Shown in pieces: positions 6,020 to 41,975 of a stretch of DNA of 64,000 nucleotides. A model generated the notes under the pieces. That model searched no databases and was not told the DNA's origin. It worked only from the letters and a program-made list of their open reading frames with translations. Positions within the stretch are counted from its first letter, which is position 1, and each line of letters starts with the position of its first letter. The stretch is from Ylistrum balloti (taxonomy: Eukaryota). Made by a program: the position numbers and the translations under genes. The stretch is from assembly GCF_031769215.1 (NCBI RefSeq), contig NW_026782116.1, forward strand, positions 1,488,001-1,552,000, written 5' to 3'.

Positions 6020-9000
6020 ATGGCAGCAAAAGAATGTGGCGAAGTTTTCATTTCCTATAGCAGCGTTGATATCACCCTGGTAAAGAACATACAAGACTGC
6101 TTAAAGAAAAATGGTAAGTTAATTAGTTATATTATTGTTGAAATATGCTTTGCTTAGTTAAAACACGAAGAAAAAAATTCCAACTGCCGAAATACAAACG
6201 GTGCTTTTATTTACTGCTCCGTGTAGCTAACTCCTTTATGAATAATTCATAAGTAACGTTAAATATTCCATTGAATAAATATTCTGGTGTCGGTTGGTGA
6301 CGAATATGAGACCTAAAGAGGCTATATGTTTGTTTATCACTCAGACTATGTAGACAAGAATCGCTTTGTGTTGCAAAATTAAATATATATATACATCTAA
6401 AGACGATTTCATAGACATATACACTCATTCACAATGTAACATTATCTTTTGACATATTGTAAATAGCTGATGATGATATAGTTTGGATGTGTGTGTGGGG
6501 GGGGGATAATAAAAAAAAATAAAGATTTTATTTTTAGAGCTTGTGACATTAATTAAACAAATGAATACGATATCACTATTGAGAAAGACCAAAAGATCTA
6601 CTCCTTGAGTAAGTAATATGAACAGTACCACGTTGATATCAATATGAGTTATCTTGTTTCCAGAAATCGATTGCGTTGTTGCCGATGATGTGAAAGCAGG
6701 AACTCACACACTAGATGTAATTGTACACTCCCTTTCAAGGAGTAAGGCATGTGTGTTTCTAGTGACCCCGGCTGCTTTGGAAAGTTCCTGGTTTGCTTTT
6801 GAAACTATCCTTACCTTAGAGAGATCGCACCAACGCGGTCAGCTGAATAGTGTGATCCTACTGCATAACGTAACTGAAGATGAGGTAACTTTTCCATAAA
6901 GTTGTATAAAAGATATACTAACGAATAACACATTTTAATACAAATTTAGAGTTAAGTGCCAAACAGAGTATTAAACTGCATCATACCATTGTTTTGCTCT
7001 TTTGAACTCGTCAGTGACGCTAAGCACATAAATTTTGAAGCCGACTGAACAAAACTCCAAAGAGATCGAAAGTAAAATCAAAATCAGGATTGGAAGATGC
7101 ACTAGCCATATAATTCACTACATTTCGTGTTTCATTTCTTTGATGTTTATAGGACAACGCCAAGTACACATGTATGTTCTGAACCGTGACATTATTCGAA
7201 TGAATTGAAACGTGACATGCAGGTTATATCAAACATCGGGGACTAAAAGTCTATGTTTACATTTATATGATCTTCTCACAGACAAATTTGTATTAAAAAT
7301 GAATTTCGTTTTTTAAATATCATTGAAAAGACAAAGAGAAAATATAAAGGCAAACCAGTAAGAAAACAGAAACAGAAAATTTTAAATCAGAATTTCTTAC
7401 TTTGAGATGTCCGAGCAGTGTATTTTTAAATAAATTTTGCTTTCAGCTTCCAAAGTTTGCCCTGTTTGACATGATTGATAAATATGAACTGGACCTGGAC
7501 GAGTTTGGACACTGGAATAATCAACAGATTAAACAGGTCATAAAGACAATCCAAGGTATCGAAGCTATTTAACTGCACGCTCGTGGCTGTAATTTTAATT
7601 CTGAACGTCGGCGTTATCTTGCATTTAATGTATTCAATTTTCTTGCTAAAACAACAACTTGAGTAGATTTCCATTTCCACGTTGTCAATATAAAATAGAA
7701 GAAATATACAGTGTCCTATTGTATAAAACAGTTTTTAACACTGCAATTGCAAATATAAGAAGTGCTTTTCAATTTCGAAAGATATTGTGAAGCATATTGT
7801 GGTGGCAATATGTATTCTTATAAATTCCAGAAGGGAAAAACATCGAATCTGAGTTACCGGTAGGGAATGTCGCCCATGCACAGGCCTGGTCTCATTATTT
7901 TGGATACCACCATATGATCCATCCACGTAGGTATTTTAATTGAATGACGTATTTATCATTTTATCGTTGCTAAAAACTCCGGAACATATACACTGTTTTA
8001 ATACGGCTGTCTCTAATAGAAAAACAAGTCTAGTTTATCAGGTTCCATTTCTTCTTTCAATAGCTGATTGAAAAGTAACAACCACAGCATACGTTGTTTC
8101 GTGTAGCTGAGGAATTGATAAGGTATAGATTGGAATCTTAATATAAGATCATAAAATTAACAAAATGTAAGAAATTTTAATTTTTAAAATATGCCATGGT
8201 TCTTTCAAGACATTTTGAATGTGTTTCTGTTGCGTTATGCGTTATATTTTATTGGTTTATAAGTCAGGCATGATTTCCCTTTTAAATTGTACGTCAAAAT
8301 GATTTGGTAGACATCTTTATAAATGATCGACGGATTGTAAGATAGAATTGATATGATACCTTTTTAACATTAATCTGATTCCCCTCCATTGGCATTTGAC
8401 ACCTCAGCTCAAATGGCTTTAACCAAATATTGCTTAACTGGTTACAATTTATAATTAACCAACCTTCTTTTACCACAAAAGCCATATGAGAAACTGAAAT
8501 TCAACGTTCGGACTTATACTATAGATCTTGCAGAGAAGATAAGAAGCTGTCCTTGGTATAGTAAAAACATGCCGATCGCAGTGTACGAACTGGTTCCCAA
8601 AGATTCCAATATACCGACATTCATAGAAGGACCGAACATAAAAAATATGGGATCACTTGGCGAAATCAAAGCGGAAGTAGCTGGCAACAAAAGAATATTC
8701 AGACTGAATGTGTACTGTATTGAAGATGGAGAAGAGGTACGAATAATACTTTAGGATTGGTAAATCTTAAAAAACTTTTCTGTGCAATACAAGTTCAGTT
8801 TGAATTGTCATGGTCTTGACTTAACTCTTTTGCTGTCGAGAGAACTACCTGCTAAGTTTTCATATATTCTTATTTTAGAATATGAGTTTGAACCTTTTTA
8901 AGTGAATAGCAGTCGTTGGATATAGCCACTTTTAAAAGCAGCATTTTCTTAAAACATTTTACCTTTTTTTTAAATTTTGTTCTTTTTATGTATTTAATTT

Positions 9001-9398
9001 TGAAAGAAATACTACTGCGTTGCACAGTATCCTAGTGTACTGGGTGCAATTTACAAGATGACCAAGTCTCCCATGATCGACCTGGACGAGCCGCACACAA
9101 TTCTGCAGGTTGCTCGATTTTACTATACTCTACAGTCCATACTCCAACACTCAAACGTTGAGGGATGCCGAAACCAGGCTAAACTCCTGTGGCTTGACGG
9201 TAATATATCAAGGAGATAAAGTAGCTTGTAGTAATGAAAATGAGCAGTGGAGAAAAAAGTTCACATTGTATCTGTTTTATATTATATAAGAATAAGATCA
9301 CATTTTAATTATTTAATTTTTTTGTTATTTCATCCATGCTTTCAGGCTCTGAAGCAGCAACGAGTGTACTGTTAAAGGCAGTTAAGAGAGATGTTAAG
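6020..9398 (+). CDS. STING1: TIR-STING unit 1: N-terminal TIR domain plus STING cyclic-dinucleotide-binding domain, no transmembrane region
   Basis: Phase-consistent exons: 6020-6113, 6664-6884, 7447-7555, 7831-7926, 8525 (or 8534)-8736, 9007-9199, 9346-9398. TIR motifs: EVFISYS, SKACVFLVTPAALESSWFAFET. STING motifs: LPVGNVAHAQAWSHYFGYHHMIHP (human STING [20 protein letters not shown]), YELVP, AGNKRIFRLNVY, YCVAQYPSV, QVARFYYTLQSIL. The last exon ends at a GT donor with no stop codon. Confidence 0.9.
6971..7250 (+). repeat. Dispersed repeat family A copy in STING intron 2
   Basis: Matches 33473-34030 at several anchors: ttaaactgcatcatac, actcgtcagtgacgctaag, aaattttgaa.cc, aacgc.aagtacacatgtat, ggactaaaagtc. 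Confidence 0.65.
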
Positions 9399-10880
9399 GT
9401 TTGCCCTATAATCTTTCTGATATTTTTGCTTAAAATTTATTTAGTTTTATCTTGCACTTCATCGCTTAAACGTAATATATTTCTGTGATAACACTGAGTG
9501 AGTTTTATCATGCACCCATGTAACTTACCCATCTTTTAGCACTGATACGGTTTAATTTCACAAATTACGTTTCGTTTGTTTTAATCTATTGCTCTATTTT
9601 TTATCATCTATACCCAAGTGTCGCCAACCTAAGTTTGTTTCCTCATATACTCTTTTAATGTATCATTTCAACTTTTATTGTACGATTTTACGTAACGAAA
9701 TGTGTACAAGCGAATTTTCAACCAATAAAAGGACTCCGAAAAATACGAACAATTTAACTCAGCTTGTATATCTTTGTTTTATTTATGCTACTGAGTTTGT
9801 AAAATTAGTTCAAAAAGAACAAATAGACAAGAAAACAGCTTTTCCAAGTCATTTGGATGAAGGTTTGTTCTAAAAGGTTTCAATGGACAAGTGTATCAAG
9901 TTAATCATATTCCTAACTCTCTTTTTGGCAGTATGAACAATGGAGAAGGCATTCAATTTTGTATCCCATTCCATTTGAGCAGGTCATTTTCAGTAGCAAA
10001 TATAATGATTCATTTTTCGCATAAGCTTCAACATTAACCAGTGGGACACTAACTTAATAGGTCACGCTTCCTTCATCTTAAATTTTTGTTATTTTAGCTT
10101 ATTAAAATATAAACTGCATTGATTGTTGGAGAAATTAACTAGCATAGAAAAATATAATTGGTTCTAACATAATGATTATTCAATTCAATAATATAAATAT
10201 CTATTTTAAATCGTAATTTCTATGATGTTATTTCAGTTGCTGAATATATAATCTCCAAGAAGACATTATACTTAGATAACTCCTCTCAAACCATGATAGC
10301 TGATATTGTTCGAGATGTTGAATCATCATGAGTAGTAAAAACTGTAACTTAGTTGTATTCGATTGTCTATGCTAAACTGCATATCCGTTTTGCAACCTAC
10401 TGTAGCTCTAGCATTATCATTACAAATGACACCTTACAAAATATATCAAACAACTGAACAACACACAAATATACCAAAACCAGACTATGCACGGGTGTTG
10501 TCACACAACGTGACGTCATCAGAATAATGACATTGCAACAATATATCTTTTTATGAATACACTAATGCGACATGGATTTTGGGAGTAGCATTAACTCCAA
10601 TACGTAGTTACTTTTGCACAATGGAGTATATAAAAAACACTGAAGATTTCCAAAATTACGGAGGTAAATTTTCCCCGGAATGTGTTATAAAACTATATAT
10701 ATGCTCGTTGTATACTATAATTTATTTTTCGTTTCCAAACGAATTCACGGGAACGCTGTAACTTTTGCTGTAAATCATCCATATGTCAGTTATGTTATAG
10801 ATTACATAAAAACATTTTCATCAAATTCAAGATGAATAAAAGAATAAAGTAAACATATAGATTGAAACATATTGATTAGA

Positions 10881-11110
10881 AAGTCCTGTTTGCCTTCGTG
10901 CAGTAAAAAGAATTCCTGTTTGGCTTCATATTTGAACAAGAAGCCATGTTTGGCTTCAGGCATGAACAAGAAGTCCTGCTTGGCTTCAGACATTAACAAG
11001 AAACTCTGTTTGGATCCATGCTTTGATAAGAAGTCATGTTGGCTTCATAAATTAAAAAAAACACTGTTTGGTTTCATACATTAAGAAAAAGATATGTCTG
11101 GCGTTATACA
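10881..11110. repeat. Degenerate 30-bp minisatellite, about 8 copies
   Basis: aagtcctgtttggcttc variants recur at 10881, 10911, 10941, 10971, 11001 and 11031. Confidence 0.85.
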
Positions 11111-11835
11111 TTAAAGAGGTAAAAACTCTATGGATGCAATATGTCATTGAGCACGGAATATAAATTCACCTAAATTAGAATCAATAACTTGCACAAATAA
11201 GAAATATTGAAAAAAATAAAGGAATTCAAAGTCATTTTAATGAAATGTTTACGTTATAGTTTATTTCCCATGGATCATTTGTTCAAAAGTTTTGCTGTTG
11301 CAAATAAGAAATTCTGATTAACAGATTTTCTACAAAATGACTCGCTTTCATTGTTTATTATACTACTTAGAACTATGTTTTGAGTGTTATTCACGGTGTC
11401 TTCAACACTGAAATAATAATGGTGGGTCTGATAAATATCTACAAATATCATTTGCGAGTGATGAACGAATAGATTATTGTTTTTGCCATCATATGTTGAT
11501 TTCTTTGCATCAACTCGTTTAGAGATAAACTATAATTATATATATGAAAACATTAGTTAAGTCATTTGATTCGATTGTTATATTGTTCTTTCAAAATAGA
11601 GGTGATATGATATGGTGTAACCCTTCATCTCCTGTTAAATTTTATATATGCTATGGATGTCAATAATGAAACACCATCAAATGTAGCGGTTGTCTAAATG
11701 AACATGTTGTACGGAGTGAAAGCAAGTCTCCGACTTTAAGATTAAGCTGTTCCTTTATATAATGTGCTTTTAATGAGTAATTAGATTTATTATCCAACTA
11801 TGTATATAACATATTCTACTGTATGCCATTTTCAG

Positions 11836-14800
11836 AGAACAGGGTTTCAAACTTTGGTTACGGATCTGCAAAAAGTCCTTCACACATTAGAAGATGGCCT
11901 ACCAAATAAGGAATACGAAGCGACTATCCTATACAACAGTGATGATGCAAAGTCCAATGAAATATGTGACCAAATTGAGAAACATCTTCTGAAGAAAAAT
12001 GTACGCCTTTTCCCGTCTCCGAATAAGCCAGGGACGAGACCATTTACAGGTAAATATTTAAATCCTGAAACAACAAGGAAGTACTAATATGGGAACATAA
12101 TCATAGTCCAAACTCAAATTCAATAAAACTAGGCTAAAATGTGAAATAAAGAGAAATTTATACAGTGACTCCTGAAAAAGTAAATGAAGAATAAGACTTA
12201 TCTTCAACGACACCTTATATGTAAATATTAGTTAATCCAAGTACACGATGTTCACAGATAAGAACAAGATATATAACAAATTAGTATGCGTTTATAATCT
12301 TTCATACCTTCCATATAGTATAATAAAGGATTTAACCTATTAAGAATATATATGCTTATAGCGATGGAAGAGGCGGCAGAAAAAGCACGATGGCTAATTC
12401 TGATCGTTACTCAAGACAGCCTCATCGACAACGATGTGTTTAAAATGCAGACGATGGCTTTGATAGCGAACAGCGTACACAGTAAGAAAGTGCGCGTCAT
12501 TCCAGTAACAGACAAGATATCTGCAGATGATATTTTACCAGACTTTTTGAAGTGGGTAACTTACATCGACATACAGACAACAGGATTTGAAAATCGTGTT
12601 TTAAAAGCACTGAGAGGTATATTGTGCTGTAGCTATTTTATCACCATTTCATTCGAGCAGTTTTTTTCTTATTAGTATTAATTTAACAGTAGAGAGGGTG
12701 ACCATTTGAAATTTTTTTTGATGACGCGTTTTTCAAGTATATCGGGGGAAAATTCATTTTTGACTAGAATCTGTTGGTCTGTCTCTACCGCGGTAACTGT
12801 TTTAAACTGACAATTTATAATATTGGTATTAATCTGTTAAAATTTTATATCGTCTTCATTTTCATATGAGTAATTGCTTGTAAAAAAAGTATCCGCATTG
12901 TGGCAAATGTCTTCGCTGTTTTATTTTTAAGGTGAAGACATCGAGCTGGCATTAGACGGGGGTCTCATCCCTGCTGGAAATGTTGGCTATGGCTTGGCCT
13001 GGGGTTATGTCACCAATTATCTGAAGGTTGTTCTTCCAAGTGAGTAATGTTTTCTACTGTATAGATGGTTATTTTCGTGGAGACGTTATTTTCGCTATTA
13101 CGTGAAAAAATAAGACATGTGTGTATTCAATGTATTTTTAAATTCAGATTGTGATTTGTTTATTTATTGAAATAGAATAGGCGTCTTAAACGCAAGTTGT
13201 CGCGAAAAGTTCGACTCGTGCAAAAACCAGCTAAACGGTATCTAAACCCGCTGATAAATTTCAGGGTATATATCACAAGGTATCTGACCAACAGATTTAT
13301 ATCAAGTTTTGGGTATAAATCATAAGGTTTCTGACCAACGGATCTATATTACGTTTAGGGTATAAAGCACAAGATTTCTGACCAACAGATGTATATTACG
13401 TTTAGGGTATAAACCACAAGGTTTCTGACCAACGGATATATGTCAAGTTTAGGGTATAAATCACAAGATAAGCGACCAACAGATATATGTCACGTTTAGG
13501 GTATAAATCACAAGGTTTCTGACCAACAGATATATATCAAGTTTAGGGTATAAATCATAAGGTTTCTGACCAACGGATCTATATTACGTTTAGGGTATAA
13601 ATCACAAGGTTTCTGACCAACAGATATATATCAAGTTTAGGGTATATATCACAAGGTATCTGACCAACAGATATATATCAAGTTCTGGGATTCATTTGGA
13701 ACATCTGTAGGTAGGATTTCTGTCTAAACAAAACATTGACATCACGTTCCATAGGGGAGGGGTTCAATTAACATGTCTCTATAAATTGACATTATCACGA
13801 ATTTATGAATAGGGATTTCTGTAATATTCAACGCAAAAGAGCAGCGTGATGATTTATCTCAATGTGTTTCTTTCAGAATTAGAACATTTACGGAATTTGT
13901 TAAAACAAAAAGCAGGCAACATGTGTATGTGCCCGAGCAAGCTATTTTTGTTGGTACCGAAAACATGTTACTGTCCAGGAAGGATCAAGAATGAGCATGT
14001 AACGCACGTGTATTCGAGTGAAGAGATAAGCGACTGTCAAGGTGGGGCAGACATCATAAAAGGTCTGGATATGTATAGCATTTCAAAGGAAGGAAACGTA
14101 AGAGAATAACATTGAATCCAATTCACTGTTTTTCCTTTCTTTCTTTTTCTTTTTTTATTTTGCTTAACTAAATTAAACACTATTAATGTAAAATGTGTTC
14201 TGTTTCTGGTATTTGTCTATTACTGATATTTAAATGTTTGTGCAAGAGACACACAAATCCGTCAGATATTTCAAGTACTGAATTAAGCTGCATTACACAG
14301 CTGGTTTGTTCTTCAAGAACTTATCAATGATTTACTAATACTAAATCAGGTCGCTGTATGAACAGAAATTTTTAACATATACCTGTATGTATAAAGCGGG
14401 TATTTGTATAATGTTCAAATATGTGGTTCTTTTTTATTATTATGTGCAATACAGAAACACATATTGTTAATTATCATGTTATCTGGCTAACAACATCTGC
14501 GTCGAGTTGGTAAGATCTTCCAACAGACTATTGGCATACCTATGAGAACCAACTGCGCCCCTCTGTTGGCTGATTTGTTTTTGTTTTCATACGAGGCTGA
14601 ATTCATTGAAGAGCTTTTCAAAACAGGTTACACAGACCTTGCTAAATCGTTTAATTTCACCTTCAAGAAATTTATTGACTTCGTCCATCGTAAATATCCA
14701 CCAGAACTGGAAATCAAAGACATGGCAGACTCTTCAACACCAGCTGCTTATCTCAATCTTTTCAAATTATCAAATTTTCAAATTATCGTCAACTGACGGG

Positions 14801-15908
14801 GTTCAAATGATGCAGGTTTAGGAAAATTATGGGAAAGTTTTATGGTCGCCATTATGATCTCACTGAGAAATATTTCATTTCTGTTTGACATGAAACTGGA
14901 CGTATTTGATACTCGTGAGTTTTCCTGTTGGTTCGGTTGTTATATACCTTGCTCTCATTAGAGAATATGACATAACTTATTTGCATTGAAGAAGGTTTAC
15001 ATGCTTACTACTCCGGAACACCTGATCTTATTCGTCTCCGTGTAAATAATTCTTTAGTTCATATTTTGCCCTTATTCCGCCCTAGTTTTGTTTAATGTGA
15101 GTTTGAATTATGATTATGTTGCCATGTTGCTATTTTCTTGATGATTATTTTTATAGATATACAATTTCTTTGGACAATATCCTGCACCGTTACGCTGTCT
15201 TCATGCGATGAACGATTGCATGATAGCTGGGATCAATCCAGAATCTATGGCAAGGGAATGTGAACGATTCTGTGATACCCTTCTAGATCTCCTGCATGGC
15301 CCAATAGGTGGTGGTCTTCAAAGCAAATGCGAACTTGTCTTCTTTGATGGTAAACACTTTTACTTTTCTGTCTGTAATTACGTGAAAAAACCCCACCAGA
15401 ATTACTCCCCTTGTCAAGTAAATTTTCAATTCAATTCAAAATTAATATGACGGGGAACCACTAGAATTAAAATACGGCAAATGCACATGAAAAGTCAGAT
15501 TCTTTGCAGTAAAAAGTTTTTCTACTTATTCGACAGAATTTTACATAGCAACCCTTGTCAAGCCAATCATCTAATGACATGTTATAGCCAATTTAACGAG
15601 CATCACAATGACCTTCCGACACATAAGAATCAGTATCTCGCCCTTAGGATTAAATAATTCCCCAATATAGTCCTAATGACGAGCATAAACCATTAAAAGA
15701 TATTTTATTTACCTGGTTATCACAAAACCATGTATCAGTTTGTATTAAAGAACTTCTTAACCTTTTAGACGAAGTCTCCAACGACCTGCAAATGCAGTTG
15801 CTGCCAAGGTTGTCTAATCAGGTCGATCCCAAAGAGACAAAGCTGAAACGGAAATCTGGACATGACGATAGGAAAGATGAACTGAAGCAAGCTAAGATGA
15901 TGAACTGA
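11836..15908 (+). CDS. STING1: TIR-STING unit 2: divergent TIR plus divergent STING domain; probably the C-terminal half of the same gene as unit 1
   Basis: Phase-consistent exons: 11836-12049, 12362-12616, 12932-13039, 13877-14097, 15157-15349, 15769-15908 (TGA). TIR motifs: YEATILYN, ARWLILIVT, VRVIPV, LPDFLKWVTYIDI. STING motifs: PAGNVGYGLAWGYVTNYLKVVLP, KLFLLVP, FFGQYPAPL, ECERFCDTLLDLL. The first exon begins at a phase-0 acceptor with no Met. Confidence 0.88.
13259..13690. repeat. 47-bp minisatellite, about 9 copies, in a STING intron
   Basis: Unit tttagggtataaatcacaaggtttctgaccaacagatatatatcaag. ctgacc recurs at 13284 and 13331. Confidence 0.95.
14497..15055 (+). mobile_element. Degraded Penelope-like retroelement fragment (RT core plus 3' end) in a STING intron
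   Basis: Translation IGIPMRTNCAPLLADLFLFSYEAEFI...YPPELEIKD...AAYL matches the GIPMGTNCAPLLADLFLYSYE motif of PLE-type RTs. It is internally deleted and frameshifted. Confidence 0.7.
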
Positions 15909-16327: not shown

Positions 16328-17859
16328 TATACTAAAAGGATAAAGAAACGCAGGGTGAACTTTAAACCAGAAATTAAGTATGATATCGGGCTTCATTTAA
16401 AACGAAATTTTGAATACTTACAGATAAATTAAAGCTTAAAAATTTCCAAAGTCTGTATTTTGCATCTGAAAATTGGTTTAGAGGTACTAACGATTAAATT
16501 GAATGGACCCATAGGATTTTGAAATTGAAATTGAACTGAGTCATCAATATCTTGCGTGTCCGCCGTTTGCTGTGGTCACGGCCCTTATTCTTCTGGTCAA
16601 AGTGTTCATGAGAGCGTTAATCCGTCTTATGGGGATGTTGTCCCACTCTTCAATCAGAGTTCTGGTCAACTGCTCTCGAGTAGCAGGGGGTGGCTGGCGC
16701 TTTCGAACCTGTCTATCCAACTGGTCCCAAAGACGCTCGATCGGGGACAAATCAGGGCTATATGGCGGCCAATCTAGTGGTTGAATGTTGTTGTTGGCCA
16801 GAAAGACTTGGCAAATCCTTGCTACGTGGGGCCTAGCATTATCCTGCTGGAGGGTTAGATTATGCTGCTGTAAGAAAGGGATAACGTGGGGTCGAAGGAT
16901 CTCATCTCTATACTTAGCTGCTGTTAAATTGCCATCAATAACAACCAATTGTGATTTTAACCCGTGTGAGATTCCTCCCCACACCATTACTGAAACGCCC
17001 CCAAGCCTATCCCTCTCTACAACGAAAGCGTCCGTAAAACGTTCGCCACGACGAAGGTAGACACGTTGACGGCCGTCAGATCGATAAAGACAGAATCGAG
17101 ACTCGTCCGTGAAGAAAACTTGTCTCCACTGCCTCAGTGGAAACCGTCGTGGAGCATGTGCAGCGACCCAGGCCATACGACGCTGACGTCGAGCAGGGGT
17201 AAGGTGTGGACCTACGAAGGGCGACGTGCTCTTACACCAACTTCTCGTAATCGATTCCTTACAGTTTTTGAACTTATAGGACGCCCATGATTTCCACGAA
17301 CATAAATGCACTCTCAACGGCAGTAAGGCGCCGATTACGCACATGAGAGACGACGATATAGCGATCCTGACGTCGTGACGTTACGCGCGGACGTCCTGAC
17401 CTAGGTCGATCGGCCAATCGCCCAGTTTCCCGAAGACGTCTTACATGACGTTCTATGGTGGAAACATTAACACCAAAGTGCCTAGCAACCTGATTTTGCA
17501 GCTGTCCTTGCATCAGCATCTGAATGGCCTGACCCCTCTGAACTTCTGTGAGTCGTGCCATTCTTAAAACGAATCAAATTCTTAATTAATTTTAGGGAAG
17601 CAGTTAGTCTGTATAAAGACTAACGAAGAGTGACTTGACCAACGCTGCATGAGACCAGAACAACACGACGCACGAAATTCTTGTTTTTTCCTTCCTCCAT
17701 TTACCAGAGCTGCGCACTGTACCGTGACTAAATTTTCGATACATGACAAAGTGTAATATGACCTAATTACTCAATCCACAAAGTTTCACTTTATTTAGAG
17801 AACGCGTTTTAAAATATCGGAATAAATATTACCCTGCGTTTCTTTATCCTTTCAGTATA
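16328..17859 (-). mobile_element. Full-length Tc1-family DNA transposon (~1.53 kb), inactive
   Basis: 29-bp TIRs at 16328-16356 (TATACTAAAAGGATAAAGAAACGCAGGGT) and 17831-17859, with one mismatch. TA flanks on both sides. Contains a transposase gene. Confidence 0.93.
16544..17561 (-). pseudogene. Tc1 transposase (DD34E) with two single-base frameshifts
   Basis: N-terminal HTH with GRPR, then FTDESRF, VMVWGGI, QQDNARPH and SPDLSPIE, with 34 residues between the second D and the E. The frame breaks near 17300 and 17215; the middle segment VRGNHGRPISSKTVRNRLREVGVRARRP is in a third frame. Confidence 0.92.
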
Positions 17860-34030: not shown

Positions 34031-34631
34031 TCCTCCAGCTGTGTCTACCGAAGATTGTACAAGAAGCACACAAATTAATAATAACTTTCAATTCAAATTA
34101 AACATTTAATACAGAATAAGCACAAAAAATTAATCGAACTGCATCATATGCACATTTTTACCCAAAGGTCAAAAATTGCATATCTCCATAGCAACTTACT
34201 TCTAGTGGCAGTTTGACAGGTATTCATATCGAAACAACACTTTATCTGCAGTGAATATTTTGACGACTTTTATGACAAACCTATTTTGATAAAGTTGTGT
34301 TTATCATTCAGTCAGCGATGATGGTAATTGATTTGGCATCAATTATTCAAAGGTAATCAGGTTACATCAGGTGATTTCCAGTACGGCGGCATAGTATTGA
34401 ATAAGTGCTTCCTGTAGGTTCAGATTCAAGACTACACACTGAAGGAAGCAATCGACAGTTATGGCGTTACTACAATCGAAGTGTGATTACGATGTCGGGA
34501 AAGTTAGGGAAATGAATTGCTGATTGAATAACTATTAAAACATAAAAATCAATATAAAACGTATTGATATCTAGAAAGGATATGTATTTGTGTGGTTATT
34601 GTGTCGTGTGGTGAGGATTAACACATATACC

Positions 34632-35696
34632 ATGAACGTTTCGGGCAATTCCAGTTCCTCAATCTTGACTAACAGAACGGAACATAACAATGGTTTTGAT
34701 TTTGACGTTTTTCTCTTTGCCATGTATGGAGTTCTACTTCCGGTCATCGTGGCTTTCGGGTACATTGGAAACATATTGACAGCTATAGTGCTATGGAAAA
34801 AGGAAATGGCGTCCGCGAATAACATCCTTCTACGTGCCCTGGTTTTGAGCGACATGACTATGATAACAAATCTGTTCATGTTTTTATCTCTACCAGTACT
34901 GTTTTCTAGATTACTGGATTACGACCTTGTTATAAATGTGATATATAACCAAGGGTTCCCAATCATTAATTACCTAGGTATGACTTCACAGCAATGTAAT
35001 GAGTATGTTCTTGTAGCCATCTCTGTGGAGCGCTACATCGCCGTCTGTCAGCCACTCAAGTACGCCCATTATAAAAGTAAACGAAAGACCATCATTCTCG
35101 TGTGTGGGATTATCACTTTTTCTTTCCTTTACAACATTCCTCGTCTGTTTGCATCAACAGTCCGACCCACTACATGCATGAACGTAAATTCCTCTTTAAC
35201 ATGTTATGAAAATCTTAGTACAAAATTCGGGGAAAGCTATTTCTACCAGGAAGTGTATTCAGTATGGATGTATGGTGCCGCATATTTTGTGTTTCCTCTC
35301 GTTGTGCTGTTTATAATGAATATTTTTATTCTAAAAGAACTGACAAAGATGAGGAGAATACGTCAGAACCTTGGTGTTATCAATTCACCAAACGCAAAGA
35401 AAGACAGCATTTCTCTTAGTCTAGTCATCATCATGACAGTGTTCGGCGTCGTCCAAACTCTAGGCTTTTTCAATCAGTTTTTGACCAATGCGTCAGGTCC
35501 ATCTATCTTCAGAGAAACTGTCAATACTTTGTATGGAATCAATTCTAGCGTTAATATTTTGATTTATGTTGTTGTAGGGAAGAAATTTAGAAGGAACGTC
35601 TCCGACCTTTTCAAGACGTGTTTGTTTTGTTCTGCGTTTCGTAAACATTCATCTGAACATTATCAAGTGTCAGAACTTGTCAGGGTTAGAATTTGA
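34632..35696 (+). CDS. Intronless class A (rhodopsin-like) GPCR, peptide-receptor-like (FMRFamide-receptor-like group), 354 aa
   Basis: Seven hydrophobic segments, with GYIGNILT (TM1), LVLSD (TM2), ISVERY (TM3), YNIPRLF (TM4) and NSSVNILIY..VGKKFRR (TM7/helix 8). The N-terminus has N-glycosylation sequons. MNVS is taken as the start. Confidence 0.93.
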   Translation: MNVSGNSSSSILTNRTEHNNGFDFDVFLFAMYGVLLPVIVAFGYIGNILTAIVLWKKEMASANNILLRALVLSDMTMITNLFMFLSLPVLFSRLLDYDLVINVIYNQGFPIINYLGMTSQQCNEYVLVAISVERYIAVCQPLKYAHYKSKRKTIILVCGIITFSFLYNIPRLFASTVRPTTCMNVNSSLTCYENLSTKFGESYFYQEVYSVWMYGAAYFVFPLVVLFIMNIFILKELTKMRRIRQNLGVINSPNAKKDSISLSLVIIMTVFGVVQTLGFFNQFLTNASGPSIFRETVNTLYGINSSVNILIYVVVGKKFRRNVSDLFKTCLFCSAFRKHSSEHYQVSELVRVRI

Positions 35697-38035
35697 AAAC
35701 GATTTTCGTTGAATTCCAAACTCATTTTGTTTGTATTATTCACCAAAATAGCCACGTGTTTATTTGTAACACAACGGAATTCCTTTCATGTAAATGTTCA
35801 CACGATCACATCATCATACGTTTAATTAAAAAATGCGGTTTTACCAACCTGATATTGTGAGTTTCATTTCATTTCAAAACCCAACAAAATGATTTTATAG
35901 GATTGAACAGAATTGTTTTTCAGTGATAAGTAATGACAATTATCTAACACGTGATCAGGTGTCAATCGGAGGTTACCAGCAATAAATGATTTACGGTAAT
36001 TTACTATCATGTCAATAATTCATTATTATGACTATGTTGTGGCTAGGAACGATATTGTAACGAGTTCCATCTATTCTAACTTTCTATGTTAAATTTGTTT
36101 TTTCAAAAATTGATAGAAAAGAAATAAAGCTATTGCAGTTTAGTCTACCTGTATTGACCAAATTAAGTGCATATACTTAATAAATTAATTATACTATTGC
36201 ACATGCATATGGTTCTATGGGGATTTGAACAGCTTAGGGCAGTTGATATACATTTCATGGGAATGGGAAGAGCTTAGAAATTTATACACTAGTGTAGCTA
36301 GATAGTAACTGTTTTCGATCACCTTTGGAATTTCCTCCTATGCTTCAAGATTTATATTCTTATCATAACTGACCATTCCTTAAAGGACGAAACACCTGTT
36401 TCATACGGTTTAATTCATTATTTGACTTAACTCTTAACTTAACATCAAACTCTAAATTGTATTAAAGATAGTATTGACATTTTGTCTTTTATACAACTTT
36501 TAATAGTGTTTTATAGTCGGTGAACAATTTTTAAAAAGTGTATGCTAAGAATATCATTATTTCTTAATGATGAAAAATGAGGGAAAATATATGTTGCAGC
36601 TTTACATAGAACATGTTCAATTCCCTTTCTTTTATCTGCCTGAAATAACGATTATATAAACACTTCAAACGATAATTCTTCAGCTTCAATAGCACAAAAA
36701 AAGTACTCAGATTCATTTTTAAAGCATTTTGGACGGAGGAGAAAATCGCACTATCATATAATGTGAATAACCAATAGTGCAGGGTTTTATCTTAGGCCGA
36801 GGATGTGTTCTATGAAATGATATAACTTATTTCGTGTGATGAGCTGTTGTGAAATAAACATAATCGTTCATCCATTCAAAATATTTGAACTACACGTCAT
36901 TAACAAAACAGTAATATATCTCACGAGATTGTACAGAAGTTTACAGGGATATTGTGGATACCATTAAAACAATTGCTCGGTGTCCCTGTAGAGTTTCAAT
37001 AGCGCTGTGGTTGTTATGTTGGTAGGAATGACTTATGTGGCCATCAACCTTCCTAGTGTCTTCCGATAGTTCATTTACCACTTTGGGAATATTCGCCGGC
37101 AATAGAGATTACAATCCAATATATAACATTCTTTAATGTATTGATGACAATAATCCTCATGCGTTACTGACAGAGGTCTGATATTAATTCTGCTCAGTTG
37201 GTACACAATTTGTAAGGATAGACAAAACACATGATACATATAAATCCCTTCACAAGTGAATATTTAGACATGTAGGAATAAGGTTACAGATTTCGATAAT
37301 GGACAAAAAACAGTTCATTTATGTCTAGAAATTCGACAAAGTCAATACTTCAATATATACCTATAGAGAAATATTTCGACAAATTAAGAATAGAAAACTG
37401 GTGCTATAGTTGTGTCATACATTCACAATAGATCAGAAGGATATATACACATATTAATGTAGTGTCTGAACGAATCAGTATATCAAATTTCCCCTTCCTA
37501 CAGAAAAAGTATTCATTCACAAATGCAAGACCATATATGTGTGCTATGTCTCCTTTATAATAAAGCATTTAAGTTCGCGAGCCAAAATTGTACAATTTAC
37601 ATGTATAGAACTATATATGTAAAAAAAATCATTTGTTAACATTGGAACTAGTGTTAATCACAGGGACCAAACCAACTAAGGCTAGCACAAGCACGGAATT
37701 GAAATATTCAAACGAAATAACATATTCGTAAATCATTGGCATTATTTTTTTTATTGGAAAACGATACATGCCATTTTCATTAAAATAATGATTACATATT
37801 TCAATCATCTTGGCACAAGTCATCAACCTGTCACCACGAAGGCACAGGACGACATATCATCTGCTTTTAAAACTGGATGCGCAGTGAATATGTCGTCAGA
37901 ACACTGAAGTTCGTTGATGAGACAACGCCAAATAATAGGGATAATAAGAGAGTCAATGGGACACAAACCTGTAATTATCTAAAGCGCAATGTGTCATTTC
38001 CCCCGTGGATTGCCGGAGTAGTAGACATCGTTACC

Positions 38036-39118
38036 ATGAACGTTACTCTTCAAATCAACGTTTCTGTTAATAGTAGTAATGAAACGGTAGATTCTGAGGC
38101 TCTTTCAAGTTTTTTGTCAGGGAATAGATTTGTCTTATACGGAATAGTATTCCCAATCATCGTATCTTTCGGGTACCTGGGCAACATACTGACAGCTATT
38201 GTGCTATGGAAAAAGGAAATGGCTTCCACGAATAACATCCTCCTCCGTGCGCTGGTTCTTTCCGATATTGCTATGCTTACAATAGGTCTCATTGCTCTGT
38301 CATGTCCCATGTTGTTGATGAAAGCGTTGGACTATGACCTTGTCATAAACGTGCTTAATAGTTTAGGATTTTCGACAATTAATTATTTTATGATGACCTC
38401 ACAGCAATTTAATATATATATCCTCGTGTCCATCTCTGTGGAGCGCTACATTGCAGTTTGTCAGCCACTCAAGTACGCCCATTATAAAAGTAAACGAAAG
38501 ACCATCATTCTCGTGTGTGGGATTATCACTTGTTCTATCCTTTACAACATTCCTCGTCTGTTTGCATCAACAGTCCGACCCACTACATGCATGAACGTAA
38601 ATTCCTCTTTAACATGTTATGAGTTGCTATACACAAACTTCGGGGAAAGCTATTTCTTCCAGGAAGTGTATTTGGTATGGATATATGGTGGAACGTATTT
38701 TGTTCTTCCACTTGCTGTGTTGCTAGTTATGAATATTTTTATTATAAAAGAACTGGAAAAGATGATGAAGATGCGTAAAAGCCTTGGTGTTATCAATTCA
38801 CCTAACGCAAAGAAAGACAGCATTTCACTTAGTCTTGTCATAATTATGACAGTGTTCGGCGTGGTCCAAACTCTAGGCTTTTTCAACCAGTTCCCAAACT
38901 TAATGGCCGACGATATTGACAAGAAAACCTACGGAATGATAGTCAACACACTGTATGCAGTTAACTCGAGTATCAATATTTTGATCTATGTAGCTGTGGG
39001 AAAGAAATTCAGGAGGCACGTCGCAGAGCTTTTAAAGGAATGTTTTCATTGTTCTTCTTGCGTTGCAGTTTCCTCCCAACATTATCAGGTGACAGAGGTT
39101 ACCAGCAGCAGACTTTGA
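38036..39118 (+). CDS. Intronless class A GPCR, tandem paralog of 34632-35696, 360 aa
   Basis: Same motif set: GYLGNILT, LVLSD, ISVERY, NSSINILIY..VGKKFRR. The MNVT start is equivalent to the paralog's. Confidence 0.93.
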   Translation: MNVTLQINVSVNSSNETVDSEALSSFLSGNRFVLYGIVFPIIVSFGYLGNILTAIVLWKKEMASTNNILLRALVLSDIAMLTIGLIALSCPMLLMKALDYDLVINVLNSLGFSTINYFMMTSQQFNIYILVSISVERYIAVCQPLKYAHYKSKRKTIILVCGIITCSILYNIPRLFASTVRPTTCMNVNSSLTCYELLYTNFGESYFFQEVYLVWIYGGTYFVLPLAVLLVMNIFIIKELEKMMKMRKSLGVINSPNAKKDSISLSLVIIMTVFGVVQTLGFFNQFPNLMADDIDKKTYGMIVNTLYAVNSSINILIYVAVGKKFRRHVAELLKECFHCSSCVAVSSQHYQVTEVTSSRL

Positions 39119-41544
39119 GTACTTTATTAGAGGTAAACCAGCAGCAGACATTGAATACTTTATTAGAGACTTACCAACATCAGACTTTGAGTACTTTATT
39201 AGAGACTTACCAACATCAGACTTTGAGTACTTTATTAGAGACTTACCAACATCAGACTTTGAGTACTTTATTAGAGGTAAACCAGCAGCAGACTTTGAGT
39301 ACTTTATTAGAGGTAAACCAGCAGCAGACTTTGAGTACTTTATTAGAGGTAAACCAGCAGCAGACTTTGAGTACTTTATTAGAGGTAAACCAGCAGCAGA
39401 CTTTGAGTACTTTATTAGAGGTAAACCAGCAGCAGACTTTGAGTACTTTATTAGAGACTTACCAACAGCAGACTTTGAGTACTTTATTAGAGACTTACCA
39501 ACAGCAGACTTTGAGTACTTTATTAGAGGTAAACCAGCAGCAGACTTTGAGTACTTTATTAGAGACTTACCAACATCAGACTTTGAGTACTTTATTAGAG
39601 ACTTACCAACATCAGACTTTGAGTACTTTATCAGAGGTAAACCAGCAGCAGACTTTGAGTACTTTATTAGAGGTAAACCAGCAGCAGACTTTGAGTACTT
39701 TATTAGAGGTAAACCAGCAGCAGACTTTGAGTACTTTATTAGAGGTAAACCAACAGCAGACTTTGAGTACTTTATTAGAGGTAAACCAGCAGCAGACTTT
39801 GAGTACTTTATTAGAGACTTACCAACATCAGACTTTGAGTACTTTATTAGAGGTAAACCAGCAGCAGACTTTGAGTACTTTATTAGAGGTAAACCAGCAG
39901 CAGACTTTGAGTACTTTATTAGAGTTAAACCAACAGCAGACTTTAAGTATTTTATTAGAGACTTACCAACAGCAGACTTTGAGTACTTTATTAGAGACTT
40001 ACCAACAGCAGACTTTAAGTACTTTATTAGAGGTAAACCAGCAGCAGACTTTGAGTACTTTATTAGAGGTAAACCAGCAGCAGACTTTGAGTACTTTATT
40101 AGAGGTAAACCAGCAGCAGACTTTGAGTACTTTATTAGAGGTAAACCAGCAGCAGACTTTGAGTACTTTATTAGAGGTAAACCAGCAGCAGACTTTGAGT
40201 ACTTTATTAGAGACTTATCAACAGCAGACTTTGAGTACTTTATTAGAGGTAAACCAACAGCAGACTTTGAGTACTTTATTAGAGGTAAACCAGCAGCAGA
40301 CTTTAAGTACTTTATTAGAGACTTACCAACAGCAGACTTTAAGTATTTTATTAGAGACTTACCAACAGCAGACTTTGAGTACTTTATTAGAGACTTACCA
40401 ACAGCAGACTTTGAGTACTTTATTAGAGGTAAACCAGCAGCAGACTTTGAGTACTTTATTAGAGGTAAACCAACAGCAGACTTTGAGTACTTTATTAGAG
40501 GTAAACCAGCAGCAGACTTTGAGTACTTTATTAGAGGTAAACCAGCAGCAGACTTTGAGTACTTTATTAGAGGTAAACCAGCAGCAGACTTTGAGTACTT
40601 TATTAGAGGTAAACCAGCAGCAGACTTTGAGTACTTTATTAGAGACTTACCAACATCAGACTTTGAGTACTTTATTAGAGACTTACCAACATCAGACTTT
40701 GAGTACTTTATTAGAGGTAAACCAGCAGCAGACTTTGAGTACTTTATTAAAGTTAAACCAACAGCAGACTTTGAGTACTTTATTAGAGACTTACCAACAG
40801 CAGACTTTGAGTACTTTATTAGAGGTAAACCAGCAGCAGACTTTGAGTACTTTATTAGAGGTAAACCAGCAGCAGACTTTGAGTACTTTATTAGAGGTAA
40901 ACCAGCAGCAGACTTTGAGTACTTTATTAGAGGTAAACCAGCAGCAGACTTTGAGTACTTTATTAGAGGTAAACCAGCAGCAGACTTTGAGTACTTTATT
41001 AGAGGTAAACCAGCAGCAGACTTTGAGTACTTTATTAGAGTTAAACCAACAGCAGACTTTGAGTACTTTATTAGAGACTTACCAACAGCAGACTTTGAGT
41101 ACTTTATTAGAGGTAAACCAGCAGCAGACTTTGAGTACTTTATTAGAGTTAAACCAACAGCAGACTTTGAGTACTTTATTAAAGTTAAACCAACAGCAGA
41201 CTTTGAGTACTTTATTAGAGGTAAACCAACAGCAGACTTTGAGTACTTTATTAGAGGTAAACCAACAGCAGACTTTGAGTACTTTATTAGAGGTAAACCA
41301 GCAGCAGACTTTGAGTACTTTATTAGAGGTAAACCAGCAGCAGACTTTGAGTACTTTATTAGAGACTTACCAACATCAGACTTTGAGTACTTTATTAGAG
41401 GTAAACCAGCAGCAGACTTTGAGTACTTTATTAAAGACTTATCAACAGCAGACTTTAAGTACTTTATTAGAGGTAAACCAGCAGCAGACGTTAGGTACTT
41501 TATTAGAGGTTTACCGACAGCAGACTTTGAGTACTTTATTAGAG
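39094..41544. repeat. 36-bp satellite, about 68 copies, starting inside the GPCR2 coding end
   Basis: Unit agaggtaaaccagcagcagactttgagtactttatt, with interspersed variants (agagacttaccaacag/cat, agagttaaaccaacag). No spacers. Confidence 0.97.
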
Positions 41545-41975
41545 CTTTTGTTGGAGATATATCAAGAACAGAGTTTGAGAGTTTTTGTTGGAGACATACC
41601 AAGAACAGACTTTGTGTGTTTTTGTTGGAGATATACCAAGAACAGACTTTGTGAGTTTTTGTTGGAGATATACCAAGAACAGACTTTGTGTGTTTTTGTT
41701 AGAGATATATCAAGAATAGACTTTGTGTGTTTTTGTCGGAGATATATCAAGAATAGACTTTGTGTGTTTTTGTTGGATATACATACCAAGAATAGACTTT
41801 GTGTGTTTTTGTTGGAGGTATACCAAGAACAGACTTTGTGTGCCCATATCGGTGATTTACCAAGAACAGACTCTGTGTGCCCATATCGGTGATTTACCAA
41901 GAACAGACTTGTGTGCCCATATCGGTGATTTACCAAGAACAGACTTTGTGTGCCCATATCGGTGATTTACCAACA
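41545..41975. repeat. Two related ~37-bp arrays abutting the 36-bp satellite
   Basis: gatataccaagaacagactttgtgtgtttttgttgga to about 41835, then gtgtgcccatatcggtgatttaccaagaacagact(ct). Both share the acca..a.cagacttt core. Confidence 0.9.

What the first reader, a model, noticed from the sequence alone, without database searches (positions are those of the whole stretch)
6020..15908. Tandem TIR-STING-TIR-STING: a probable single-chain, doubled cyclic-dinucleotide receptor
Seen: two full TIR+STING units 2.4 kb apart on the same strand. Unit 1 ends at a phase-0 donor (9398) with no stop. Unit 2 begins at a phase-0 acceptor (11836) with no Met. Direct splicing gives an uninterrupted 702-aa ORF. 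The units share exon architecture: the helix-1 exon is phase 1/1, the lid exon is phase 1/0, and the C-lobe exon is exactly 193 nt, phase 0/1, in both (9007-9199 and 15157-15349). Their sequences are otherwise far apart, which points to an old internal duplication. Known: STING binds ligand as a symmetric homodimer, and TM-less TIR-STING fusions occur in bacterial CBASS and in oyster. Inferred: one chain could fold as an intramolecular pseudo-heterodimer, or dimerise at both units to build filaments. Tandem architectures may already be annotated in some bivalves, so novelty needs checking.
Basis: partly seen in the sequence, partly recalled or inferred. Interest (0 to 1): 0.9.

Follow-up and report, generated by a model that had tools for sequence, protein, structure and literature searches.

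The report
Scallop doubled TIR-STING immune receptor gene
This is one intact scallop gene encoding a single protein with two TIR signalling domains and two STING nucleotide-sensor domains; the layout is old, is already annotated in many bivalves and has been mentioned in print, but its working has not been studied.

Summary
Thirteen coding exons on the + strand (6020-15908), all with GT-AG introns, give an open 702-aa TIR-STING-TIR-STING protein when donor 9398 joins acceptor 11836.

The window is Ylistrum balloti. RefSeq XP_060069794.1 (LOC132549838, "uncharacterized protein") already uses this junction, but it skips the conserved helix-1 exon 7831-7926.

More than 20 collinear homologues of about 660-750 aa occur in scallops, oysters, ark shell and mussels. 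Several lie on 2.3-3.5 kb contigs as uninterrupted ORFs, which look like transcripts.

In a tree of half-proteins, all first units form one clade and all second units the other (support 100), with matching subtrees. The duplication therefore predates the scallop/oyster/ark-shell split.

The halves are asymmetric:
- TIR1 keeps the alpha-C glutamate; TIR2 has lost it.
- STING1 keeps the R238-like lid arginine; STING2 of this scallop clade lacks both lid arginines.

AlphaFold models of two homologues have pTM 0.62-0.64. They superpose across STING1-TIR2-STING2 on an independent database model (TM 0.85 and 0.72). This points to fixed packing within one chain, but I could not inspect the geometry.

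The architecture is not new: a 2024 paper notes oyster STINGs with two STING and two TIR domains. The mechanism is uncharacterised.

The parts
6020..6113 (+). Exon 1: start codon and TIR1 strand A / helix A (MAAKECGEVFISYSS...)
   Evidence: Same N-terminus as RefSeq XP_060069794.1.
6664..6884 (+). Exon 2: TIR1 core, including the alpha-C motif SSWFAFET with the conserved glutamate
   Evidence: Pfam TIR 21.8 bits and TIR_2 22.2 bits on this exon alone. The Glu is kept in 10 of 11 first units.
7447..7555 (+). Exon 3: end of TIR1 and the TIR1-STING1 linker
7831..7926 (+). Exon 4: STING1 helix alpha-1 (LPVGNVAHAQAWSHYFGYHHMIHP). Phase 1/1. Skipped in the RefSeq model.
   Evidence: Pfam STING_LBD profile positions 1-20. 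Nearly invariant in homologues. Absent from P0002.
8525..8736 (+). Exon 5: STING1 beta-sheet and lid (…EVAGNKRIFRLNVY…). Phase 1/0.
   Evidence: Pfam STING_LBD positions 42-95. The R238-equivalent Arg is present; the R232 equivalent is Val.
9007..9199 (+). Exon 6: STING1 C-lobe. 193 nt, phase 0/1.
   Evidence: Pfam STING_LBD positions 99-158, 25.8 bits. 100% match to P0002 residues 213-276.
9346..9398 (+). Exon 7: STING1 last helix (…SVLLKAVKRDVK). Ends in phase 0 at donor AAG|gtttgc, with no stop.
9399..11835 (+). Intron 7, 2437 nt, between the two units. It is the longest intron of the gene. It holds a 30-nt minisatellite (10881-11081), several AATAAA/ATTAAA hexamers and an in-frame ATG at 11800.
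11836..12049 (+). Exon 8: inter-unit linker (RTGFQTLVTDLQKVLHTLE…) and the first part of TIR2
   Evidence: The linker aligns with those of P0012 and P0001 from its first residue. The junction is identical in RefSeq P0002.
12362..12616 (+). Exon 9: TIR2 core. The alpha-C position is Gln (DVFKMQT), not Glu.
   Evidence: Pfam TIR_2 19.9 bits. Glu is present in only 1 of 11 second units.
12932..13039 (+). Exon 10: STING2 helix alpha-1 (IPAGNVGYGLAWGYVTNYLKVVLP). Phase 1/1.
   Evidence: Pfam STING_LBD positions 1-20. Aligned to human STING alpha-1.
13877..14097 (+). Exon 11: STING2 beta-sheet and a shortened lid (…CQGGADIIKGLDMY…) without the lid arginines. Phase 1/0.
15157..15349 (+). Exon 12: STING2 C-lobe. 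193 nt, phase 0/1.
15769..15908 (+). Exon 13: C-terminal basic tail and TGA stop. No TM segment and no pLxIS motif.

Best explanation
SHOWN:
- Positions 6020-15908 (+) hold one 13-exon gene of the scallop Ylistrum balloti (RefSeq LOC132549838).
- It encodes a soluble 702-aa TIR1-STING1-TIR2-STING2 protein. It has no signal peptide and no TM helix.
- It belongs to a family of doubled TIR-STING proteins found in scallops, oysters, ark shells and mussels.
- The internal duplication was fixed before these lineages split, and the two halves have since evolved as a linked pair.
- The halves have diverged asymmetrically. TIR1 keeps the alpha-C glutamate that is catalytic in NAD-cleaving TIR domains; TIR2 has lost it.
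- Both STING domains keep the stacking tyrosine of helix alpha-1.
- Only STING1 keeps the R238-like lid arginine. In this scallop subclade STING2 has a shorter lid (GGA-x-II-K) with no arginine.

INFERRED (about 55% likely):
- The two STING domains of one chain pack against each other as a pseudo-heterodimer.
- This would create one asymmetric nucleotide pocket instead of the symmetric pocket of a STING homodimer.
- TIR1 and TIR2 would form the matching pseudo-dimer, with a single complete active or signalling face.
- Binding of a cGLR-made cyclic dinucleotide would close the pocket, drive side-by-side oligomerisation as in other STINGs, and switch on TIR1. TIR1 would act either as an NADase or as a scaffold for other TIR proteins.
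For: Gene structure and ORF:
- Exons, phases and the 702-aa ORF.

Same junction in RefSeq:
- XP_060069794.1 uses the 9398/11836 junction.

Homologues:
- The 702-aa product is collinear over its full length with P0012 (53% identity), P0001 (54%), P0013, P0032, P0004, P0005, P0006, P0016 and P0030.
- Further doubled members occur in Saccostrea, Ostrea, C. virginica and Mytilus.

Transcript-like evidence:
- L001: a 742-aa ORF on a 2339-nt contig.
- C. gigas: the 693-aa ORF lies on 11 contigs of 2-5 kb, with precomputed Pfam order TIR, STING_LBD, TIR_2, STING_LBD.

Age of the duplication:
- In the half-protein tree, U1 and U2 are each one side of a branch with SH-aLRT 100, and the subtrees are congruent.
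- STING-part intron positions and phases are shared between the units.

Domains and motifs:
- Pfam domain calls above the cut-offs.
- Motif table.
- HMMER alignment of STING2 to human STING (E=2.7e-13) puts Cys, Ile and Lys at the R232, R238 and Y240 positions.
- The first unit of the paralogue P0001 aligns to C. gigas TIR-STING 6WT6 with E=2e-31.
- No TM segment.

Packing within the chain:
- AF2 pTM is 0.62 (P0012) and 0.64 (P0016) for four-domain chains.
- Foldseek superposes STING1-TIR2-STING2 of both models on AFDB A0A6J8D1Q6 (TM by hit 0.85, rmsd 3.7 Å; and 0.72). Both STING domains superpose on the 444-aa AFDB model R7T7C2 (TM by hit 0.68 and 0.66). These values are too high for a single superposed domain.
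- The G166-equivalent helix alpha-1 position is Gly in all first units and an invariant Asn in all second units. This would fit a complementary hetero-interface. That G166 lies at the human dimer interface is from my own knowledge.
Against: - There are no transcript data for Ylistrum itself. The RefSeq model is computational, and it differs from the 702-aa model in two ways. It skips exon 4. It also lacks 3 residues at the exon 11/12 junction, which no canonical splice site in the window explains.
- Donor 9398 (AAG|gtttgc) is the weakest-looking donor in the gene.
- Intron 7 holds poly(A)-signal hexamers and an in-frame ATG at 11800. Separate short isoforms are therefore not excluded.
- The AlphaFold evidence is indirect. 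Coordinates and PAE were not available, so I could not check that the STING1-STING2 contact has the canonical STING dimer geometry.
- All the compared models are AlphaFold predictions, so they are not independent of the method.
- The models are of homologues (53% and 30% identical), not of the window protein.
- STING1 of this gene has Val at the R232 position and Phe at Y240, so binding of a canonical dinucleotide is uncertain.
- Whether the TIR1 glutamate is catalytic here is unknown.
Confidence: 0.8

Rival explanations
1. These are two separate tandem genes. Unit 1 ends on its own, either by reading through donor 9398 to the stop at 9486-9488 or by using a small terminal exon in 9399-11835. 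Unit 2 is transcribed from its own promoter and starts at the in-frame ATG at 11800.
For: - Reading through 9398 stays open for 29 more codons and then stops.
- AATAAA/ATTAAA hexamers lie at 9724, 10101 and further on.
- ATG 11800 is in frame with exon 8.
- Intron 7 is the longest intron, and its donor is the least consensus-like.
- Single-unit TIR-STING genes exist in bivalves: PDB 6WT6 and the 396-aa CgSTING (PMC8218723).
Against: - RefSeq joins the two units at exactly this junction.
- Every homologue of comparable length is doubled and collinear across the junction.
- Linker homology (…KVLxTLE…) starts at the acceptor. The 12 codons between ATG 11800 and 11836 have no counterpart in any homologue.
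- Doubled ORFs occur on transcript-sized contigs in relatives.
- The U1 and U2 trees are congruent, as expected for permanently linked halves.
Confidence: 0.05
2. This is one fused chain, but the STING domains do not pair within it. Each STING domain pairs with the same domain of another chain (STING1:STING1', STING2:STING2'). The protein would then be a bivalent building block that forms chains or lattices, with or without ligand.
For: - All solved STINGs are homodimers, and both alpha-1 helices here are strongly conserved.
- Activated STINGs do form filaments (PMC9402430).
- I could not inspect the predicted interface, so the fixed arrangement seen might be a non-canonical contact.
Against: - A STING2 homodimer in this scallop clade would have a pocket with no lid arginine at all, yet STING2 is under clear constraint. 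The GGA motif, alpha-1 and several Cys are invariant.
- The unit-specific Gly/Asn difference in alpha-1 is fixed across the family.
- Monomer AF2 models give the same STING1-TIR2-STING2 arrangement in three lineages.
Confidence: 0.3
3. Unit 2 is a decayed, non-functional appendage (dead TIR, dead pocket), and only unit 1 works, as an ordinary TIR-STING that homodimerises.
For: - TIR2 lacks the alpha-C Glu.
- STING2 lacks both lid arginines and has Gln and Ala at the E260 and T263 positions.
Against: - Unit 2 has stayed intact, in frame and recognisable in every lineage since before the scallop/oyster split.
- Its alpha-1 and core motifs are as conserved as those of unit 1.
- In oysters, ark shell and some scallop paralogues, the unit 2 lid keeps the R238-like Arg. 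Its loss is therefore a recent change in one subclade, not general decay.
Confidence: 0.1

Closest known systems
Doubled TIR-STING proteins of other bivalves. Examples: C. gigas LOC105332933 / XP_034329245.1 (693 aa); Ostrea edulis 'stimulator of interferon genes protein-like isoform X2' (704 aa); Mizuhopecten yessoensis LOC110447478 (725 aa); Tegillarca KAJ8310192.1. [quoted passage not shown]
   Same: - Same four-domain order and similar length.
- Collinear alignment at 29-54% identity.
- Same U1/U2 clade structure.
- Same TIR1-live / TIR2-dead pattern.
   Different: - This gene belongs to a scallop subclade in which the STING2 lid is shortened and has lost the R238- and Y240-like residues.
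- Its own STING1 has Val at the R232 position.
- I found no study of the mechanism of any member.
Single-unit C. gigas TIR-STING (PDB 6WT6 apo, 6WT7 with 2'3'-cGAMP; the 396-aa CgSTING of PMC8218723)
   Same: - Soluble TIR-STING fusion of animal origin.
- It is the best solved-structure match to the first unit (E=2e-31 for the paralogue P0001:1-345).
- It is the top Foldseek PDB hit of the model.
   Different: - It has one unit per chain and forms a symmetric homodimer.
- It is only about 25-30% identical.
- The whole-unit superposition is poor (TM by target 0.55, rmsd 8 Å), so the TIR-STING orientation differs from the crystal chain.
Bacterial CBASS TIR-STING (SfSTING filament, PMC9402430)
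   Same: - TIR N-terminal to a STING nucleotide-binding domain.
- Glutamate on TIR helix alpha-C.
- Ligand-driven filament formation is the proposed activation route.
   Different: - It is a single-unit homodimer.
- It has the prokaryotic minimal STING fold.
- The match to 9lmq_A is weak (TM 0.35).
- According to PMC10732462, animal TIR-STINGs arose by independent domain shuffling.
Canonical metazoan TM-STING (human STING1, Nematostella STING)
   Same: - The STING_LBD fold. Single STING domains of the model superpose at TM 0.83-0.90, rmsd about 2 Å.
- The alpha-1 motif and stacking Tyr are conserved.
   Different: - No four-helix TM domain and no C-terminal pLxIS tail.
- TIR domains take the place of the TM domain.
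- Two ligand-binding domains lie in one chain.

Membership tests
STING ligand-binding domain (Pfam PF15009) | Significant match to the STING_LBD profile, once per unit | tested here: met
   - The RefSeq product of this gene scores 109.9 bits (cut-off 27) in 2 stretches.
- Exon pieces hit collinear profile positions in both units.
STING ligand-binding domain (Pfam PF15009) | STING fold (alpha-1 stem, five-stranded sheet, lid) | tested here: met
   - Tested on homologues, not on the window protein.
- AF2 models of P0012 and P0016 match solved STING domains at TM 0.83-0.90, rmsd 1.7-2.5 Å.
STING ligand-binding domain (Pfam PF15009) | Cyclic-dinucleotide contact residues (human Y167, R232, R238, Y240, E260, T263) | tested here: inconclusive
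   - STING1: Tyr, Val, Arg, Phe, Gln, Ser.
- STING2: Tyr, Cys, Ile, Lys, Gln, Ala.
- Source. Residue numbering is from the HMMER alignment to human STING.
STING ligand-binding domain (Pfam PF15009) | Binds a cyclic dinucleotide | not testable with these tools
   Needs purified protein and binding assays.
TIR domain (PF13676 / PF01582) | Significant match to a TIR profile, once per unit | tested here: met
   - TIR_2 scores 75.3 bits (cut-off 28) in 2 stretches on P0002.
- Exon-level hits occur in both units.
NAD-cleaving TIR domains (SARM1, plant TIR, bacterial TIR-STING) | Glutamate on helix alpha-C | tested here: inconclusive
   - TIR1 has SSWFAFET, with Glu kept in 10 of 11 first units. TIR2 has DVFKMQT (Gln), with Glu in only 1 of 11 second units.
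- The position is assigned by alignment to 6WT6 and the W-x-x-x-E pattern; the catalytic role is from my own knowledge and PMC9402430.
- Enzyme activity was not tested.
Bivalve doubled TIR-STING family | One chain with the order TIR-STING-TIR-STING, collinear with other members | tested here: met
Bivalve doubled TIR-STING family | The first unit groups with first units and the second with second units | tested here: met
   SH-aLRT 100 for both sides of the branch.
Bivalve doubled TIR-STING family | Both units on one mRNA | tested here: inconclusive
   - Shown for relatives by uninterrupted ORFs on 2.3-3.5 kb contigs.
- For this locus, only the RefSeq computational model is available.
Canonical TM-STING | N-terminal transmembrane helices and a C-terminal TBK1/IRF3 tail (pLxIS) | tested here: not met
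   - The maximum 19-residue Kyte-Doolittle mean is 1.17.
- There is no L-x-I-S motif.

The most novel reading that the evidence does not exclude
The doubled chain is a natural single-chain STING. STING1 and STING2 would form an obligate intramolecular pseudo-heterodimer, giving one asymmetric pocket with a lid arginine from one side only. It would be coupled to one live and one dead TIR. The design has been kept for hundreds of millions of years in lophotrochozoans. The asymmetry would mean it is tuned to an asymmetric or non-canonical nucleotide signal from the greatly expanded bivalve cGLR repertoire. It would also mean that activation needs no dimerisation step, only filament growth.
Probability: 0.4. 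Interest if true: 0.75.

Novelty: new member of a known kind. Interest (0 to 1): 0.45.

Why it matters
Bivalves have hundreds of cGAS-like receptors and up to ten STING genes (PMC9980059). How these signals are sorted is unknown. All mechanistic work on animal TIR-STING that I found used the single-unit oyster protein.

If the doubled form is a covalent pseudo-heterodimer, it breaks the two-fold symmetry on which all known STING-ligand recognition rests. It would also offer a ready-made single-chain STING for structural and ligand-specificity studies. The live-TIR / dead-TIR pairing recalls the composite TIR active site of bacterial TIR-STING filaments.

The present result mainly shows that:
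- the gene is real;
- the RefSeq model is probably missing a conserved exon;
- the architecture is ancient and widespread, and so is not a new discovery.

Tried and rejected
1. The 702-aa spliced protein has no reference form, so it could not be given to the search, fold or family tools. I worked with single exons, the RefSeq model P0002 and homologues. All whole-protein comparisons of the 702-aa model were done in scripts.
2. Exon-wise Pfam hits are each below the curated cut-offs and are convincing only together.
3. A PDB sequence search with one exon gave only a marginal hit (8ydn, E=0.12).
4. The ESM Atlas look-alike search returned only generic short TIR clusters with scores under 0.9, which is uninformative.
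5. Word-indexed homologue searches saturated on TIR words and returned few hits. An alignment of divergent members did better.
6. Literature searches for 'TIR-STING-TIR-STING', 'tandem STING', 'two STING domains' and scallop STING found one passing mention (PMC11103948) and no mechanistic study. Morehouse 2020 (PMC7572726) is not held. From memory, Gerdol and colleagues (Dev Comp Immunol 2017) described duplicated TIR/STING modules in mussels; I could not check this.
7. I looked for a canonical splice explanation of the 3-residue difference between RefSeq and my model at exons 11/12. There is none in the window.
8. No cGLR or other immune gene showed up among the long ORFs nearby. They hold a DDE transposase and GPCR genes.
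9. Pseudogene reading: rejected, because the ORF is intact and conserved.
10. Chance ORF: rejected, given 12 canonical introns, shared phases and 100% identity to a RefSeq product.

Full report
WHAT IS THERE

The window has about 33% G+C and a eukaryotic gene structure.

- Unit 1 has seven exons: 6020-6113, 6664-6884, 7447-7555, 7831-7926, 8525-8736, 9007-9199, 9346-9398. They give 326 codons and end in phase 0 without a stop.
- Unit 2 has six exons: 11836-12049, 12362-12616, 12932-13039, 13877-14097, 15157-15349, 15769-15908. They start in phase 0 and give 376 codons plus TGA.
- All twelve introns are GT-AG, and the joined product is 702 aa.
- The units are 22% identical (E=5e-15).
- Three intron positions of the STING parts fall in the same alignment columns with the same phases, and a fourth is within three columns. 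The TIR introns differ.
- Pfam hits on single exons are weak, but they line up as TIR followed by STING_LBD positions 1-20, about 40-95 and about 100-158 in both units.
- No other unit lies in the 64 kb.

There is one qualification. An in-frame ATG lies at 11800, 36 nt upstream of the acceptor, so 'no Met' is not a proof of fusion.

ONE GENE OR TWO

A search of 1.8 billion representative proteins with the 64-aa C-lobe exon found a 100% match in a 667-aa protein. This is RefSeq XP_060069794.1, 'uncharacterized protein LOC132549838 [Ylistrum balloti]'. Its sequence runs ...LLKAVKRDVK-RTGFQTLV..., so it uses the same 9398/11836 junction.

The RefSeq model differs from the 702-aa model in two places.
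- It skips exon 4 (7831-7926, 96 nt, in frame). This exon encodes helix alpha-1 of STING1 and is almost invariant in relatives. The skip is most likely a prediction error or a minor isoform.
- It lacks three residues at the exon 11/12 junction. I found no canonical splice site that would explain this.

The 702-aa product aligns end to end with doubled proteins of 660-750 aa:
- P0012 (53% identity);
- both halves of a 1422-aa Ylistrum paralogue (54% and 48%);
- Pecten maximus;
- two further unnamed proteins from sequencing-run assemblies;
- Tegillarca granosa;
- Crassostrea gigas XP_034329245.1;
- Mizuhopecten yessoensis.

A profile search added Saccostrea, Ostrea edulis ('stimulator of interferon genes protein-like isoform X2'), C. 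virginica and a 536-aa Mytilus edulis 'MITA'.

Linker homology (…KVLxTLE…) begins right at the acceptor.

P0012 is encoded as an uninterrupted 2229-nt ORF on a 2339-nt contig. The C. gigas protein lies on eleven 2-5 kb contigs, and the four I fetched come from four different sequencing runs. Each of those four has flanking untranslated sequence. The Ylistrum gene carries 12 introns, so these contigs are almost certainly assembled transcripts. No poly(A) tails were seen.

I put the fused reading at about 0.93. Separate short isoforms cannot be excluded. Reading through donor 9398 would add 29 hydrophobic residues before a stop, and poly(A)-signal hexamers follow.

AGE AND ASYMMETRY

I cut eleven doubled proteins at the junction and built a tree of the 22 halves.
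- All first units form one side of a branch and all second units the other (SH-aLRT 100).
- The species groupings are the same within each side.

The duplication therefore predates the split of scallops, oysters and ark shells, and the halves have stayed linked since.

The halves differ in a consistent way.
- The W-x-x-x-E glutamate on TIR helix alpha-C is kept in 10 of 11 first units. This is the catalytic position in NAD-cleaving TIRs, by my own knowledge and PMC9402430. It is kept in only 1 of 11 second units. Here unit 1 reads SSWFAFET and unit 2 reads DVFKMQT.
- Both alpha-1 helices are strongly conserved but carry unit-specific signatures. One is Gly in first units against an invariant Asn in second units, at the position of human G166.
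- In the lid, all first units keep the R238-like arginine. This gene has Val at R232 and Phe at Y240.
- Second units of oysters, ark shell and two other lineages also keep the R238-like arginine. The scallop subclade that contains this gene instead has a shorter GGA-x-II-K lid.
- HMMER's alignment to human STING (E=2.7e-13) puts Cys, Ile and Lys at R232, R238 and Y240 of STING2.

These results agree with three sibling first-stage notes on the same stretch. They add that the loss of the STING2 lid is a recent change confined to one clade.

The protein has no TM segment and no pLxIS tail.

FOLD AND DOMAIN PACKING

The window protein could not be submitted, so I folded two homologues with family alignments.
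- P0012: pLDDT 72, pTM 0.62.
- C. gigas P0016: pLDDT 78, pTM 0.64.

Single STING domains match solved STINGs at TM 0.83-0.90. The best whole-unit match is the C. gigas TIR-STING 6WT7/6WT6, but with rmsd about 8 Å.

Against AlphaFold DB:
- Residues spanning STING1-TIR2-STING2 superpose on a 532-aa 'TMEM173' model (A0A6J8D1Q6). TM by hit is 0.85 with rmsd 3.7 Å for P0012, and 0.72 for P0016.
- Both STING domains superpose on a 444-aa model, R7T7C2 (TM by hit 0.68 and 0.66).
- An 873-aa 'TIR domain-containing protein' (R7T8P6) matches over the whole chain (TM by query 0.54 and 0.51).

TM values this high cannot come from one superposed domain. AlphaFold therefore places the domains in the same relative arrangement in several lineages. 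That implies a predicted contact within the chain.

I could not see coordinates or PAE. Whether the contact is the canonical STING dimer interface remains untested. All these models also share the same method.

WHAT IT MOST LIKELY DOES

By homology it is a cytosolic nucleotide-second-messenger receptor of the bivalve cGLR-STING system. My preferred mechanism, at about 55%, is an intramolecular STING1-STING2 pseudo-heterodimer. It would have a single asymmetric pocket and a TIR1/TIR2 pseudo-dimer with one complete face, activated by ligand-driven oligomerisation.

The main rival, at about 30%, is intermolecular pairing of like domains to build chains. The readings of two separate genes (about 5%) and of a decayed second unit (about 10%) fit the data poorly.

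COMPARISON WITH WHAT IS KNOWN, AND NOVELTY

- The solved and functionally studied oyster proteins are single-unit: 6WT6/6WT7, and the 396-aa CgSTING of PMC8218723.
- PMC10732462 treats animal TIR-STING as an independent domain shuffle.
- Many RefSeq entries already carry the doubled architecture.

The architecture is thus known and this gene is already modelled. What is missing is any mechanistic study. I rate the finding as a new member of a known kind with moderate interest. The asymmetric pseudo-heterodimer idea is the part worth testing.

Noticed in passing
window 7831-7926 and 15157-15165: The RefSeq model XP_060069794.1 (667 aa) skips the intact, highly conserved exon that encodes STING1 helix alpha-1. 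It also lacks 3 residues (IYN or NIY) at the exon 11/12 junction. No canonical GT or AG in the window explains the second difference. The Tegillarca model KAJ8310192.1 lacks the same alpha-1 region.
   Followed up: partly
P0001 (XP_060080375.1/XP_060080376.1, LOC132559766, another Ylistrum locus): This is a 1422-aa RefSeq model with four TIR-STING units in a row (Pfam STING_LBD in 4 stretches). Its two halves fall in different scallop subclades of the half-protein tree. It may be two neighbouring doubled genes merged by the predictor, or a true quadruple protein.
   Followed up: partly
window 9399-9488: If donor 9398 is not used, the frame stays open for 29 residues (VCPIIFLIFLLKIYLVLSCTSSLKRNIFL) and then stops. 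The tail is TM-like (Kyte-Doolittle 19-residue mean 2.55). One homologue (P0005, 748 aa) has a real-looking C-terminal TM segment. The tail here may simply reflect T-rich intron sequence.
   Followed up: partly
window 13263-13684 and 10881-11081: There are two tandem repeats inside introns. One is a 47-nt unit x 9 copies (87% matches) in intron 10. The other is a 30-nt unit x 6.8 copies (69% matches) in intron 7.
   Followed up: no
window 16544-17344 (-): A 266-aa ORF with a DDE_3 transposase domain (E=1.2e-18) lies about 640 nt downstream of the gene's stop. It is probably a Tc1/mariner-type element.
   Followed up: no
window 14491-14793 (+): A 101-aa open frame inside intron 11 (…GIPMRTNCAPLLADLFLFSYEAEF…) looks like a mobile-element remnant to the eye but has no Pfam hit.
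   Followed up: partly
window 34590-35696 (+) and 37877-39118 (+): Two single-exon rhodopsin-family GPCR ORFs lie here (7tm_1, E=1.8e-22 and 7.4e-24). They are followed at 39032-41892 by very long overlapping ORFs on both strands (950 aa and 856 aa) that have only spurious Pfam hits, which suggests a repetitive stretch.
   Followed up: no
AlphaFold DB hits R7T8P6 (873 aa) and R7T7C2 (444 aa): These are whole-chain structural matches to a 'TIR domain-containing protein' and to a protein that seems to hold two STING domains without the middle TIR. From the accession style I believe they are from the annelid Capitella, which would push the doubled layout beyond molluscs. The tool gave no organism.
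   Followed up: no
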